A stretch of 64,000 nt of DNA, taken from the NCBI RefSeq assembly GCF_033153115.1, contig NW_026889824.1, positions 1,240,001 to 1,304,000 on the forward strand. Direction: 5' to 3'. Below the pieces are notes generated by a model, which searched no databases, had not been told where the DNA came from, and was given only the letters and a program-made list of their open reading frames with translations. The position numbers and the translations under genes were made by a program. Position 1 is the first letter of the stretch; every line of letters begins with the position of its first letter. Positions 1,954-5,708 of the stretch are shown one piece after another. The DNA comes from Saccostrea echinata (Eukaryota).

Positions 1954-4632
1954 ATGGAAGCAAACAGTAAGCTACAGTTTGTTAGTTCCCCTGATGTCCC
2001 GCGGTCCTCAGATCGTGTGATTCTGGAGTATGTGTTCGCGAACCACACTAACTACCAGTTCTGGAGTAAAGTAAGAGTAGTGGACACCGAACCAAACACA
2101 GTCCAGGGTACGAGTCCATAGTAGAATTATTTACCACCTTTATCTATCACTTTATTTGAACATTGCATTTTAAAACCTTTATATCACCCTCCTCCGTATT
2201 CCATTTTTACATGTACAATGATGTCATTTTTCTCCAGATTGTCCTGTCTGGGATAATTATATGTGGAACAGCATAAACCAGGACGATTCTGAACTTTTTG
2301 ACATGATAATGAAGCCAGTGGCCATGTTTGAAAATCCATTCCTGAAAAGTCCCCATAAACTGGTTCTCTGTGACATGTGGCTAACACTGGACAAACCTGC
2401 AGGTACATATAACGATTAAAAGTAAATTTTAGAAATGCAACGCCAGTCTGATATTATTTATGTTTTTACATACATACCAATATTGGAAGAAAAAATCCTT
2501 TTGAAAAAGAGAGCGTCACGAATGTGTGTTTCGATTATATCCCAAACTTGATAAAAAACAAAATATAAACATGTTTGAATTAAGTAAGTAGTCTTTTTTT
2601 AAATAATTAAAACAGATAAATTAAACATTTAGATTTTATGATTAATATTATCTTTCTGTATGTAGGAATTAACACGAGAGTACAATGTGTTGAAACAATG
2701 GAGAGACTAAAGTATGACCCAGTAACGGGACACCGACCCAAAGAGTCCCATGATCCGTGGTTCGGTATAGAGCAGGAGTACGTAGTAGTGAGAGATGACG
2801 GCAAGCCAACCAGTTATGACCCCAAAACATACGACTACTCATCACTCAGTAGGCATTTTTTTCCTTCATTAAAAACTTTGCATGCAAAGTTTATTTTAGC
2901 TGCAGTTTATTTCTGCTTAGTGAAGGATAAAATTGTGAAATTAATACAGAATGCTGTTGAAAAAAAGTTTACCAACAGAAGAAAGAAAAGAAAGAAAGAA
3001 CCCACGATTTCTAAGCGGAGTGAAAATAGCAACACGTAATTTTATAATATTTAATCAGAGTCCAACCCTATAGAATGTAAAATTAATCACCTGAACAATT
3101 AACGACAATTGTGGGTAATTTTACATATACAATTGCATTGATGAATTTAAAAGTAAAGGACAAGGTATGGTAAAGGCCGAATCTGGCCCCTTATTTGATG
3201 TAAAAATCAGAACACAGTTAAAATTGTGATAGTTTGTAGTAAAGAACTTAAAATGATGTTTGTTTTTAAAACCAGCACTAATTTTGATTCAAAGCTTACA
3301 TGGAGGCCACAAGAAGGTGCCGAAGTAGGACATTTTCTCGAATTTCCTCAATTCTGGTGGAATTTCATCAAATTTGAGATACTTTTCACTTTGGGAAGCA
3401 TAGAGCACAAGCTTGCCTATGTGAGCTTTTTATACATAAGATGCATCTGATACTACTGTATGAAATATATAAATTTGGTAGATAGGCAAGCTTGTGCTCT
3501 ATGTTTTCTGAAACAAATGCGCTAAAAAATCAATGAAAATTAAGTTTGCATAAAAATGAGAAAATTCGGAAATTGACATATTTTCTGACCTTCCTGTGAC
3601 CTCTATATATCCCCTAACTTGGAATCAATACTCATTTTGTAGCAGGTGTGCCAACAGATTTTTATTGATAAACTGATGCATCATTCCAAAAGACACCCCA
3701 AACAAGGGGCCAAAAAGGGGTCTTAGCCTACCTTGCCCTTTGCAGAATAACTTAGCCATTGTTTAACCATGAGTATCAATTCAATTAATATTTTTTTCTC
3801 AGTTATCTACTGCAGTATTGGACATGAACACGACAGGAATGTTGGACTGGAAAGGGACTTGTCACTGAAACACTTACAAGCCTGCATCTATGCTGGTATT
3901 TATGTCAGTGGATGTATACGGGAAAACGGACCGTCTCAGGTATTTCTCTGATATATTTGTACAGTGTACGTGAAGTACTTAATCTGTCAACAAGGTGATG
4001 TACTATTAATCAAGGGCTTTTGGGTCAACTATGAAATTTTTATTATAAATAATGTTTTAGAAAATCTTGTACATGTAAGATGGAATATGGCTGTACACAG
4101 ACGAAAAAAAAATTAACTCACCTTGCAAAGATGATAAGATTCTTTTAGGTACATACATGATATGGGTATACATTATGTATATTTTGAAAGGAAATACACA
4201 GAAAACTTTTTTCTGAAAATTCCAAAAGTTTAAAACCTCAGAATCTTACGAGAAACCAGGAAATTGAAATGCGACCTCGTATATAGGCTCTACATGTACA
4301 CTATGCATGGAAGCAAAACGTCTAAGAAAACATGTACAGAAATTCATTCTGGTATGAATACAAATAAAATACTTTTCACATGAGAGCGTGGTCATCCGGC
4401 AAATTCACCTAGTCGTCGAAAAAAAAATCCTCATTCTCAAAGACCGTGTAGTGTAGGACAGCGCCGCAAGAATTCCATCGGCATCGAAAGCAAGTTTTAG
4501 AACTTGCCTAGATGGCCGAGCGGTCTAGCGCGCTGTTCCTGTACTGCTAGAAGACAGATTCCGTAGGTCGAGAGTTCAACCCCGGATTGGGGCGGAAGTG
4601 GGTATCCATATAAAAGTGAATTTCCTTGTGCT

Positions 4633-4687
<55 letters not shown>

Positions 4688-5708
4688 CCAAAAATATTGA
4701 CCATTTCACCTTTACACACTGTGGAATTGTCTTCTGTTTGTAAAGAACAAACTTCTTCAAGAAAGCATATTAACAACGGTATTCTTTCTCAAAATTTTCC
4801 TGATAAAAATCTTTATCTTTTTATAGATATATACATTTCCATCAATACTGGTACAAACATCTTTACGACCCAGTTGAACTGTTACTGCATGTATATGTCA
4901 TATATTTTTGTGCTGTCTTGCTCTACTGAGAAACCAATATTCGGTAATTATTACACGTACAATGTATCTTTCAGTGGGAGTATCAGGTCGGGCCATGCCC
5001 TGGGGTCACGGTGGGGGACCACCTACAGATGTCCCGTTACATCTTATTGAGACTAGCGGAGATGTACGGTCTGAGGGTTACCCTGAAAGCTGCCCCGGTC
5101 AGTGGGGAGGCCTTCTTTTCTGGTGGACATTTGAACTTCAGCGTCAGAAAAATGAGGGAAAAAGACGGAATCAAGTACGCTTTAAAAAAAATCAATGTAT
5201 TAGAAATTTAAAAGAATACTAGGGGAAAAACAACTAGATCCAATCTCGTTGCGATCAACAAGTAGATCTTCCGTTACATGTGTTTTATGTTTAATGAAAA
5301 GATAATTAAGTAAGTGAATATTTTTAATCTGATTCCAGATTTATACAGCATGCAATTGAAGTATTGTCTAAATCTGATCCTTTGCCGCTGTTGCAACTAT
5401 ACGACCAAACTCTTGAGAAAGACAACTCTGAGAGATTAGCCAATAAGTCAGGACATTGGCATCCTAGGCAGGACGACTTCGTGGTGGACGGAGAAAATAA
5501 GGTTTTCACCACAATCAGGATTCCTCCCCTTGTGGCGGCGGAGGGGCGGGGCTACATGGAGGATCGCAGACCACCCTCCTCTGTTGACCCATACGCAGCT
5601 ACTTCTGGACTTGTCCGTGCATGTATATTCGGCGATTATCTGAAGCCAGGAAACGAACATCTGAAAGATCTTTCAGTATGGGATAAAAATGCATCTGAAC
5701 TGAATTGA
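1954..5708 (+). CDS. Divergent glutamine synthetase type II-like protein (402 aa, 6 coding exons)
   Basis: Exons 1954-2107, 2238-2402, 2666-2848, 3803-3939, 4975-5174, 5339-5708. All introns are GT-AG with compatible phases, total 1209 nt. GSII motifs: PVAMFENPF..HKLVLCD, PWFGIEQEY, ACIYAGI, ENGPSQWEYQVGPC, GHLNFS, IRIP, GYMEDRRP, DPY. Probable 5' UTR exon donor at 262/263; AATAAA at ~5796. Confidence 0.92.
3155..3741. mobile_element. Palindromic MITE in GS-like intron 3 (Kolobok-like termini, tentative)
   Basis: Imperfect TIRs AAAGGACAAGGTATGG.. / ..CCTACCTTGCCCTTT, plus an internal perfect inverted pair AGAGCACAAGCTTGCCTAT (3402-3420) / ATAGGCAAGCTTGTGCTCT (3482-3500). Confidence 0.65.
4506..4635 (+). 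mobile_element. tRNA-derived SINE head / tRNA pseudogene
   Basis: A-box TGGCCGAGCGG (4513-4523), B-box GTTCAACCC (4574-4582), imperfect acceptor stem GCCTAGA/TTGGGGC and a degenerate anticodon arm. Followed directly by (TA)n. Confidence 0.55.
4636..4681. repeat. (TA)n microsatellite
   Basis: Pure TA run seen directly. Confidence 0.97.

What the first reader, a model, noticed from the sequence alone, without database searches (positions are those of the whole stretch)
1954..5708. Intact GSII-fold enzyme with a rebuilt substrate pocket: candidate animal gamma-glutamyl-amine (or other acid:amine) ligase
Seen: a clean 402-aa spliced ORF. By manual alignment to human GLUL numbering, all six metal ligands are retained: E134/E136 in FGIEQEY, E196/E203 in RENGPSQWE, H253 in GHLNFS and E338 in YMEDRRP. 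N255, S257, R299, R324, R340 and Y162 are also kept. The ammonium-site motif WNFDGSST (D63, S66) has become WDNYMWNS. The catalytic flap GFHET (E305) has become GHWHP, with Trp (5457-5459) at the Glu position. The glutamate-amino-binding loop N248-G249 is F-F (5113-5118), R319 is K, and there is an insertion of ~10 aa before PWFG. Established: loss of the Asp and flap-Glu ammonium residues, often with Trp or another hydrophobic residue at the flap, marks bacterial GS-like gamma-glutamyl-amine ligases (GmaS, PauA/PuuA types). Inference: this is an ATP/metal-dependent ligase for a bulky amine, possibly with a non-glutamate acid, that arose convergently in the eukaryotic GSII lineage. It would be neither a true GS nor a dead pseudo-enzyme.
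Basis: partly seen in the sequence, partly recalled or inferred. Interest (0 to 1): 0.85.

Follow-up and report, generated by a model that had tools for sequence, protein, structure and literature searches.

The report
Oyster glutamine-synthetase-like ligase, ammonia site rebuilt
This intact oyster gene encodes a glutamine-synthetase relative that keeps all its ATP and metal machinery but has lost the residues that handle ammonia, so it is probably an uncharacterised ligase joining an acid to some other amine; it belongs to an old, expanded, bivalve-only family that nobody has studied.

Summary
Six exons with AG/GT borders (1954-5708, +) give a 402-aa protein. It is identical to RefSeq XP_061167469.1, "glutamine synthetase-like", of Saccostrea echinata. 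It is a type II glutamine synthetase (GSII) homologue: E 1.3e-68 to human GLUL, and the AF2 model of its 94.5%-identical orthologue has TM 0.78-0.89 to human GS.

- **Kept:** all six metal ligands, the ATP/phosphoryl residues and R299. R319 is Lys.
- **Replaced:** D63/G64/S65 (Tyr/Met/Trp), flap E305 (Trp) and W247-N248-G249 (A-F-F). All of these are invariant in 112 canonical animal GSII sequences.

The gene belongs to a bivalve-only clade. The window's type occurs in oysters, mussels and Pinctada, and more distant types in ark clam, Solemya and heterodont clams. The clade shares derived changes: G172E, A195R, R319K and a flap of aromatic-His-Pro.

This genome has an intact tandem twin 24 kb upstream (dN/dS 0.11), a second cluster of 3-4 copies, and two ordinary GS genes with the same intron positions.

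The aromatic residue at the flap Glu position parallels the bacterial γ-glutamyl-amine ligases GmaS, PauA7 and GlnA4. Best reading: an active ATP-dependent carboxylate-amine ligase that no longer uses ammonia, substrates unknown. No biochemistry exists.

The parts
1954..2107 (+). Exon 1 (ATG at 1954-1956; residues 1-51 plus the first base of codon 52). It is the start of the strongly diverged N-terminal beta-grasp domain.
   Evidence: GT donor at 2108. The joined protein is identical to RefSeq XP_061167469.1.
2238..2402 (+). Exon 2. It holds the rebuilt ammonium-site loop WDNYMWNS (W56-S63, 2249-2272) in place of canonical WNFDGSST. Human D63 aligns with Met60 (2261-2263) or Tyr59, depending on gap placement.
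   Evidence: D63, G64, S65 and S66 are invariant in 112 canonical GSII sequences.
2666..2848 (+). Exon 3. It holds the family-specific insertion of about 11 residues (YDPVTGHRPKE) and the motif PWFGIEQEY, with metal ligands E142 (2770-2772, human E134) and E144 (2776-2778, human E136).
3803..3939 (+). Exon 4. It holds Y171 (human Y162), a 4-residue insertion (GHEHD), the family-fixed changes G172E and A195R, and metal ligand E208 (3922-3924, human E196) in IRENGPSQ.
4975..5174 (+). Exon 5. It holds E215 (4978-4980, human E203). A259-F260-F261 replace the invariant W247-N248-G249 (F-F at 5113-5118). H265 (5128-5130, human H253), N267 and S269 are kept.
5339..5708 (+). Exon 6 (stop codon 5706-5708). 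It holds R312 (5433-5435, human R299). The flap GHWHP has W320 (5457-5459) at human E305, followed by the family-fixed His-Pro. K334 (5499-5501) replaces R319. R340 (5517-5519, human R324), E354 (5559-5561, human E338) and R356 (human R340) are kept. A family-specific C-terminal extension of about 25 residues has the conserved motif LKDL..W.

Best explanation
The gene encodes a cytosolic GSII-fold enzyme. It belongs to an ancient bivalve-only family derived from ordinary glutamine synthetase.

**First half-reaction, kept.** A carboxylate, most likely the gamma-carboxylate of glutamate or of a glutamate-like acid, would be phosphorylated by ATP on a two- or three-metal centre. This is inferred from a fully conserved core.

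**Second half-reaction, changed.** It no longer uses ammonia. The acidic ammonium pocket (D63', S65/S66', flap E305) is replaced by aromatic and hydrophobic residues (Tyr/Met/Trp, and a flap of Trp-His-Pro). The acyl-phosphate would then be attacked by an organic amine. The family-fixed flap His (at human T306) or Glu (at human G172) are candidate replacement bases; this is inference.

**Specificity.** The loop that clamps glutamate's alpha-amino group (247-249) differs between paralogues. This suggests that the copies differ in the acid or amine they accept.

**What is shown and what is inferred.** Shown: the gene model, fold, residue pattern, family distribution and purifying selection. Inferred: catalytic activity, oligomeric state and substrates.
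For: **Intact gene**
- The model is intact and identical to the RefSeq model.
- The Magallana orthologues stand on contigs of 1.4-1.8 kb. These are too short to hold the introns, so they are spliced mRNA.

**Fold**
- Full-length phmmer E 1.3e-68 to human GLUL.
- AF2 model of the 94.5%-identical orthologue P0138: pLDDT 92, pTM 0.93. Foldseek TM 0.78-0.89 to human GS.

**Catalytic core**
- In 12 family members that are only 54-83% identical, these are all invariant: E134, E136, E196, E203, H253, E338, N255, S257, R299, R324, Y336, R340 and R341.
- R319 is always Lys.
- PWFG, NFS and MR (W130, F256, R262) are also invariant.

**Nucleophile site**
- D63, G64, S65, S66, E305 and T306 are invariant in 112 canonical GSII sequences and are replaced in every family member.

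**Precedent**
- An aromatic residue at the flap Glu together with loss of Asp50' is the hallmark of characterised gamma-glutamyl-amine ligases: GmaS Trp300/Ala48', PauA7 W296 and GlnA4 F331.

**Selection**
- dN/dS 0.11 against the tandem twin.
- dN/dS 0.22-0.31 between two cluster-B paralogues.

**Pocket variation**
- Positions 247-249 have entropy 2.0-2.4 bits, against a family mean of 1.06. Tandem expansion fits diversifying specificity.

**True GS is not missing**
- Two canonical GS genes sit on another contig.

**Protein-level hint**
- The M. gigas orthologue K1PQ62 was among the ten most abundant identifications in a Pinctada protein extract (PMC10792636; orthology).
Against: - There are no enzymatic data for any member of the family.
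- The loop that binds glutamate's alpha-amino group is not conserved, so the acid may not be glutamate.
- R319 is Lys in every member, which could weaken phosphoryl transfer.
- The heterodont branch of the wider clade has lost R299, and two of its members have lost H253. Parts of the superfamily may therefore be non-catalytic.
- High abundance in a proteome fits a structural role as well as an enzyme.
- No coordinates were available to check where W320, H321, Y59 and W61 sit relative to the metals.
- The homo-oligomer prediction gave no verdict.
- RNA reads for this genome could not be examined.
Confidence: 0.55

Rival explanations
1. It is a non-catalytic protein (pseudo-enzyme): an abundant structural, nucleotide-binding or regulatory protein that keeps the GS fold and perhaps ATP/metal binding but makes no amide bond. 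Vertebrate lens lengsin, recalled from memory as a GS-fold protein without GS activity, would be the analogue.
For: - Both catalytic bases of GS (D63', E305) are gone, and the glutamate alpha-amino loop is unconstrained.
- The Pfam N-domain model no longer matches.
- An orthologue is among the most abundant proteins in a Pinctada extract.
- The heterodont relatives have also lost R299, and some have lost H253.
Against: - Every metal ligand and every ATP/phosphoryl residue is invariant across paralogues that have diverged to about 55% identity.
- dN/dS is 0.11.
- A merely structural role would not be expected to hold 13 scattered catalytic residues fixed across the whole type-1 family.
- Characterised bacterial amine ligases show the same losses and are active.
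Confidence: 0.25
2. It is an active enzyme of the GS/carboxylate-amine ligase fold with a different acyl substrate or different chemistry. Examples are a non-amino carboxylic acid, an N-blocked or peptide-embedded glutamate (as PafA does with Pup, recalled from memory), or a non-amine nucleophile.
For: - W247-N248-G249, invariant in 112 canonical GSII sequences, are A-F-F here and differ in every paralogue group. This opens or reshapes the side of the pocket that holds glutamate's alpha-amino group.
- Family-fixed new charged residues (A195R, G172E) lie next to metal-ligand segments.
Against: - R299, which binds the alpha-carboxylate in GS (established knowledge of GS structures), is invariant in the window's type, as are E134 and R340. 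This argues for a glutamate-like acid.
- No positive evidence points to any particular alternative.
Confidence: 0.15
3. It is still a glutamine synthetase that uses ammonia through a modified mechanism.
For: - The overall fold and the first-half-reaction residues are intact.
- Databases name it 'glutamine synthetase(-like)'.
Against: - The ammonium-site residues are all replaced.
- NCBIfam GlnII scores 179.7 bits against a cut-off of 500.
- The genome keeps two canonical GS genes.
- Bacterial enzymes with the same losses do not use ammonium.
Confidence: 0.05

Closest known systems
Eukaryotic type II glutamine synthetase (human GLUL, PDB 2OJW/2QC8/8DNU; Drosophila Gs2, 7CPR)
   Same: - Same fold (TM 0.78-0.89) and 34-40% identity.
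- Same five intron positions as the oyster's own GS genes.
- All six metal ligands, the ATP-site residues and R299/R324/R340 are identical.
   Different: - D63, G64, S65, E305, T306 and W247-N248-G249 are replaced, and R319 is Lys.
- There is an 11-residue insertion before PWFG, a 4-residue insertion after Y162, a 2-residue longer flap and a conserved C-terminal extension of about 25 residues.
- It fails the NCBIfam GlnII cut-off, and the Pfam N-domain is not detected.
Bacterial GS-like gamma-glutamyl-amine ligases: GmaS, PuuA/PauA7, GlnA2/GlnA3/GlnA4 and NpaA1
   Same: - The metal, ATP and glutamate-phosphorylating core is retained.
- The flap Glu is replaced by Trp or Phe, and Asp50' by a non-acidic residue (PMC7948447; PMC6529630; PMC11335346).
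- The oyster protein has Trp at the same flap position.
   Different: - Those enzymes descend from GSI-type dodecameric enzymes of bacteria. This one descends from the animal GSII gene, so the likeness is convergent.
- The bacterial ligases are reported to keep the glutamate-binding residues. Here the alpha-amino loop 247-249 is not kept.
- No activity has been shown here.
Other animal GSII paralogues that lack D63/E305, seen here in ticks and in teleost fish (annotated 'glutamine synthetase-like')
   Same: They are GSII-derived, keep the metal ligands and R299/R324/R340, and have lost D63 and E305.
   Different: - The motifs differ. Ticks have WTFCG and a flap MLATP. Fish have a shortened N-loop and a flap with T, M, P or V.
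- The fish group nests inside vertebrate GS and is therefore independent.
- The tick group joins the bivalve clade in the quick tree, but both sit on long branches, so this may be an artefact.
- Neither group has the bivalve-specific G172E/A195R changes, insertions or C-terminal tail.
Orphan mollusc activity gamma-glutamylhistamine synthetase (EC 6.3.2.18, Aplysia; EC number and ATP dependence recalled from memory) and gamma-glutamyl-serotonin formation in annelids and cone snails
   Same: This reaction type in lophotrochozoans has, as far as I recall, no gene assigned. It was found here only through citations of Stein & Weinreich 1983 and Sloley 1994.
   Different: The family was found only in bivalves. 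Profile searches returned only canonical GS for gastropods. The link is therefore a lead, not supported.

Membership tests
True glutamine synthetase, type II (EC 6.3.1.2) | GSII fold and significant sequence homology | tested here: met
   phmmer E 1.3e-68 to human GLUL. Foldseek TM 0.78-0.89. Pfam Gln-synt_C 34.2 bits against a cut-off of 24.
True glutamine synthetase, type II (EC 6.3.1.2) | Metal ligands E134, E136, E196, E203, H253 and E338 | tested here: met
   All six are present here and invariant in 12 family members.
True glutamine synthetase, type II (EC 6.3.1.2) | Ammonium site and catalytic bases: D63' with the G64-S65-S66 loop, and the flap E305 | tested here: not met
   They are invariant in 112 canonical GSII sequences. 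Here they are Tyr/Met/Trp/Asn and Trp.
True glutamine synthetase, type II (EC 6.3.1.2) | Glutamate alpha-amino loop W247-N248-G249 | tested here: not met
   It is A-F-F here and hypervariable in the family.
True glutamine synthetase, type II (EC 6.3.1.2) | Curated equivalog score (NCBIfam NF041605 GlnII) and the Pfam Gln-synt_N domain | tested here: not met
   179.7 bits against a cut-off of 500. PF03951 is not detected here, while a canonical GS scores 49 bits.
GS-like gamma-glutamyl-amine ligases (GmaS/PuuA/PauA/GlnA3-4/NpaA1 kind) | Retained ATP/metal/acyl-phosphate core combined with loss of the flap Glu (aromatic or hydrophobic instead) and of Asp50' | tested here: met
   for this protein. 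for the defining pattern in the characterised enzymes.
GS-like gamma-glutamyl-amine ligases (GmaS/PuuA/PauA/GlnA3-4/NpaA1 kind) | Descent from the bacterial GSI-type lineage | tested here: not met
   The best PDB and database relatives are all eukaryotic GSII. Introns are shared with the oyster's GS genes. It works like them at most; it is not a member of their clade.
GS-like gamma-glutamyl-amine ligases (GmaS/PuuA/PauA/GlnA3-4/NpaA1 kind) | Demonstrated ATP-dependent gamma-glutamylation of an organic amine | not testable with these tools
   This needs recombinant enzyme assays.
GS-fold pseudo-enzyme (lengsin-like) | Decay of catalytic metal/ATP residues and relaxed constraint on the active site | tested here: not met
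   The core residues are invariant, and dN/dS is 0.11 and 0.22-0.31. The defining pattern itself is recalled from memory, not checked here.

The most novel reading that the evidence does not exclude
Bivalves carry an ancient, expanded family of GSII-derived amide-bond ligases that make gamma-glutamyl (or other acyl) conjugates of organic amines. If so, animals re-invented, from their own glutamine synthetase, the chemistry that bacteria built from GSI. Paralogues would be tuned to different amines, for example biogenic monoamines, polyamines, dietary or xenobiotic amines. In the boldest version this family, or its independent counterparts in ticks and teleosts, supplies the unassigned genes behind the gamma-glutamyl-amine synthetase activities described in invertebrates.
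Probability: 0.4. Interest if true: 0.8.

Novelty: new variant of a known kind. Interest (0 to 1): 0.62.

Why it matters
- Glutamine synthetase is among the most conserved enzymes known. In 112 animal sequences examined here, none of the ammonia-handling positions varies.
- A whole bivalve-wide family rewrites exactly those positions while freezing the ATP/metal core, and it is multi-copy in this oyster. That points to a new enzymatic activity in animals that automatic annotation hides under the name "glutamine synthetase(-like)".
- If it is an amine ligase, it would be the first such enzyme from the GSII lineage that I know of. It would be a clean case of convergent re-engineering with the bacterial GmaS/PuuA/GlnA4 enzymes.
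- It would also be a candidate route for amine conjugation or detoxification in commercially important oysters and mussels.
- It warns that "GS" counts and expression values in bivalve omics studies mix two functionally different proteins. One example is the proteomic study that read K1PQ62 as glutamine synthetase.

Tried and rejected

No orthologue DNA could be fetched, so dN/dS could be computed only between paralogues of this genome.
- Complex prediction with two copies of P0138 returned no verdict (score 0.01). That is no evidence either way on oligomerisation.

**Exon-by-exon searches**
- Pfam on single exons found only a weak Gln-synt_C hit on exon 5.
- The joined protein was never typed into a search tool. 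It was built only inside scripts from window.fa. Later it was replaced by the identical database protein P0469, found through the listing of cluster members.
- Until then P0138 (94.5% identical) served as the proxy, and the AF2 model is of P0138.

**Side checks**
- ARAGORN and Rfam did not recognise the tRNA-like stretch in intron 4.
- Paper searches by accession and by topic found no study of this family. The exception is one proteomics paper that lists K1PQ62.
- The search of earlier findings returned nothing relevant.

**Rejected ideas**
- A pseudogene: the frame is intact, dN/dS is 0.11 and the model matches RefSeq.
- Contamination or horizontal transfer from bacteria: the introns are shared with the host's GS genes and the nearest relatives are animal GSII.
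- A direct assignment to Aplysia gamma-glutamylhistamine synthetase: no gastropod member was found.

**Unfinished**
- The careful IQ-TREE run did not finish, so the trees cited are quick trees with SH-aLRT support only.
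Full report
**1. The observation**

Reading 1500-6300 and joining six exons in a script gives 1209 nt. 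The exons are 1954-2107, 2238-2402, 2666-2848, 3803-3939, 4975-5174 and 5339-5708, all with AG...GT borders. The result is 402 codons plus TGA with no internal stop.

The joined protein was built only inside scripts. Later a cluster look-up returned P0469 = XP_061167469.1, "glutamine synthetase-like [Saccostrea echinata]", which is identical to my model. It also returned P0471 = XP_061167470.1, which is identical to a second copy I had assembled from the genome. From then on the full-length protein was used by that id.

The organism is Saccostrea echinata. The exons of P0140, a S. echinata RefSeq protein, are found at 100% identity on contig C1 of the window's genome.

**2. What it is homologous to**

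- Each exon from 2 to 6 hits only eukaryotic type II glutamine synthetases (GSII) in the PDB.
- The full-length protein aligns to human GLUL residues 23-363 with E 1.3e-68.
- An AlphaFold2 model of the 94.5%-identical S. cucullata orthologue P0138, built with a 144-sequence alignment, has pLDDT 92 and pTM 0.93. Foldseek puts human GS first, with TM 0.78-0.89.
- Pfam sees only the catalytic domain (34 bits). It does not see the N-terminal beta-grasp domain, which a canonical GS matches at 49 bits.
- The NCBIfam GlnII equivalog model scores 179.7 bits against a cut-off of 500.

**3. Residue check**

Latimeria GS (P0180) has the same numbering as human GLUL at five anchor motifs, so it served as the ruler.

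Kept:
- Metal ligands E134, E136, E196, E203, H253 and E338.
- N255, S257, R299, R324, Y336, R340, R341 and Y162.
- PWFG (W130), F256 and R262.

Changed:
- WNFDGSST is now WDNYMWNS, one residue longer. D63 aligns with Met or Tyr according to gap placement, and G64/S65 with Trp/Asn or Met/Trp.
- W247-N248-G249 are A-F-F.
- R319 is Lys.
- The flap, canonically TG-x-HETS, is NKSGHWHP and is two residues longer. Trp320 aligns to E305 in HMMER and in two MAFFT alignments. One fast MAFFT run puts His there.
- No alignment puts an acidic residue at 63 or 305.

One small correction: with HMMER's alignment S66 is still Ser in this copy.

**4. More than chance**

In 112 canonical animal GSII sequences, D63, G64, S65, S66, W247, G249, E305, T306 and R319 are invariant, and N248 is Asn in 111 of 112.

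Twelve full-length family members are 54-83% identical to one another:
- The metal, ATP and phosphoryl residues and R299 are all invariant.
- R319K, T306H, S307P, A195R and G172E are fixed.
- Positions 247-249 are among the most variable in the protein, with entropy 2.0-2.4 bits against a mean of 1.06.

So the half of the site that makes the acyl-phosphate is frozen. The half that holds ammonia is rebuilt. The part that clamps glutamate's amino group varies between paralogues.

**5. The family**

- A HMMER scan of 1.84 billion representatives with exon 6, and word-indexed searches with P0001 and with a family profile, find full-length members only in oysters (Saccostrea, Ostrea, Magallana/Crassostrea) and mussels (Mytilus spp.), plus a Pinctada fragment.
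- Profile scores are 675-747 bits for members against at most 321 bits for any single-domain canonical GS.
- A second profile uncovers more distant relatives, again only in bivalves: Tegillarca, Solemya, Mercenaria, Mactra and Mya.
- These share G172E, A195R/K, R319K and a flap of aromatic-x-Pro.
- The heterodont branch has in addition lost R299 (to Phe or Tyr), and two transcripts have lost H253.
- Quick ML trees (LG+C20) recover the window's type as one clade (SH-aLRT 100, stem about 0.8-0.9 substitutions per site). They also recover the whole bivalve superfamily as one clade (SH-aLRT 100).
- No gastropod, cephalopod, brachiopod or annelid member appeared. This is a limit of the databases searched, not proof of absence.

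**6. In this genome**

One search shows three groups of copies:
- **Tandem twin.** It lies 24 kb upstream of the window (G000:C75:1218242-1221408) and has the same six exons. It differs at 37 nucleotides and 10 residues. dN = 0.012, dS = 0.107 and dN/dS = 0.11.
- **Cluster on contig C1.** It holds 3-4 copies at 10.65-10.71 Mb. One encodes P0140 exactly. One looks disrupted in exon 6. Two of them compare at dN/dS 0.22-0.31.
- **Ordinary GS genes on contig C4.** There are two, with WNYDGSST, DWNGAGAH and HETS.

The five introns of the window gene fall at the same alignment positions as those of the canonical genes. The family therefore arose by duplication of the animal GS gene. It did not arrive by transfer or retroposition.

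**7. Expression**

- Indirect evidence: Magallana orthologues occur as complete ORFs on Logan contigs of 1.4-1.8 kb. These are too short for the intron-bearing gene, so they are spliced transcripts.
- A proteomics paper lists K1PQ62 among the ten most abundant proteins of a Pinctada martensii protein extract and reads it as glutamine synthetase (PMC10792636). K1PQ62 is the M. gigas orthologue of this gene, with flap GRWHP. The identification was cross-species and should be treated as a hint.

**8. Mechanism**

In GS, D50'/D63' binds and deprotonates ammonium, and the flap Glu closes the site and takes the last proton (PMC6529630; PMC7948447).

The characterised GS-like enzymes that ligate organic amines have lost both residues and carry an aromatic residue at the flap position:
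- GmaS has Trp300 and Ala48'.
- PauA7 has W296.
- GlnA4 has F331.
- NpaA1 has hydrophobic replacements and a large hydrophobic pocket.

The oyster protein shows the same signature on a GSII scaffold. The most economical reading is therefore an ATP-dependent ligase whose nucleophile is an amine larger than ammonia. Candidate replacement bases are the family-fixed His after the flap Trp and the fixed Glu at human position 172. This is inference.

The role of R319 in phosphoryl transfer follows from its equivalence to R339 of the Salmonella enzyme, which I take from established GS structures, not from a tool. Lys keeps the charge.

Because 247-249 are not conserved, the acyl substrate may differ from free glutamate. 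R299, E134 and R340 argue that it is still glutamate-like.

**9. Rivals**

- **Pseudo-enzyme.** This is the main rival. It is disfavoured by the invariance of 13 scattered catalytic residues and by the low dN/dS. It cannot be excluded without an assay, and it is more plausible for the heterodont branch.
- **Different acid or chemistry.** This remains open.
- **Residual true GS activity.** This is unlikely.

**10. Novelty**

Databases call these proteins "glutamine synthetase(-like)". I found no paper that treats them as a distinct family.

GS-like amine ligases are well known in bacteria, so the kind is known. A GSII-derived, animal, bivalve-wide and expanded version is a new variant. Its substrates are the open question.

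The link to the old Aplysia gamma-glutamylhistamine synthetase activity (cited) is attractive. It is not supported by the taxonomic distribution found here.

Noticed in passing
G000:C75:1218242-1221408 (locus L013: 2242-5411), 24 kb upstream of the window: An intact tandem twin of the gene (XP_061167470.1). It has the same six exons and differs at 10 residues, including S63N in the rebuilt ammonium-site loop. dN/dS is 0.11.
   Followed up: yes
G000:C1:10652410-10706833 (loci L014, L015, L016, L012, L004): A second cluster of 3-4 family copies ('group B', about 68% identical, with flap VKGHP, i.e. Gly at the E305 position). One copy encodes XP_061176276.1 exactly. One copy (L015) has exon 6 split or disrupted and may be a pseudogene. 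One has a gap of about 10.5 kb between exons 4 and 5.
   Followed up: partly
G000:C4:2879830-2882906 and 2913123-2918439 (loci L017, L018), minus strand: Two ordinary glutamine synthetase genes with all canonical motifs and the same intron positions as the divergent gene. The oyster therefore does not depend on the divergent family for glutamine synthesis.
   Followed up: yes
Proteins P0366, P0376, P0389, P0392, P0404, P0407 (ticks) and P0212, P0226, P0231, P0234 (teleost fish): These are separate GSII-derived 'glutamine synthetase-like' families that have also lost D63 and E305 while keeping the metal ligands. The fish group nests inside vertebrate GS and is therefore independent. Loss of the ammonia site in GSII paralogues seems to be recurrent in animals.
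   Followed up: partly
Proteins P0063, P0343, P0344, P0345, P0347, P0339, P0341 (Mercenaria, Mactra, Mya and transcripts): The heterodont branch of the bivalve superfamily has R298-R299 replaced by Trp-Phe/Tyr. Two transcripts have Gln or Asn at the metal ligand H253. This branch may use a different acid or be non-catalytic.
   Followed up: no
window 4508-4592 (+), inside intron 4: A tRNA-like stretch with D-arm and T-arm-like boxes resembling a Ser/Leu-type tRNA. ARAGORN and Rfam do not call it. It is probably a tRNA-derived SINE or tRNA pseudogene. A (TA)n microsatellite follows at about 4630-4690.
   Followed up: partly
window 13984-15480 (+) and 26875-27468 (-): The neighbouring ORFs are a single-exon BACK/Kelch-repeat protein (498 aa) and an exon of a class I SAM-dependent methyltransferase. 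No functional link to the ligase gene is evident.
   Followed up: partly
PMC10792636 (Heliyon 2024): K1PQ62, the M. gigas orthologue of this divergent gene, is reported among the ten most abundant proteins of a Pinctada martensii extract and is discussed as if it were true glutamine synthetase. This is an example of the annotation hiding the difference.
   Followed up: partly
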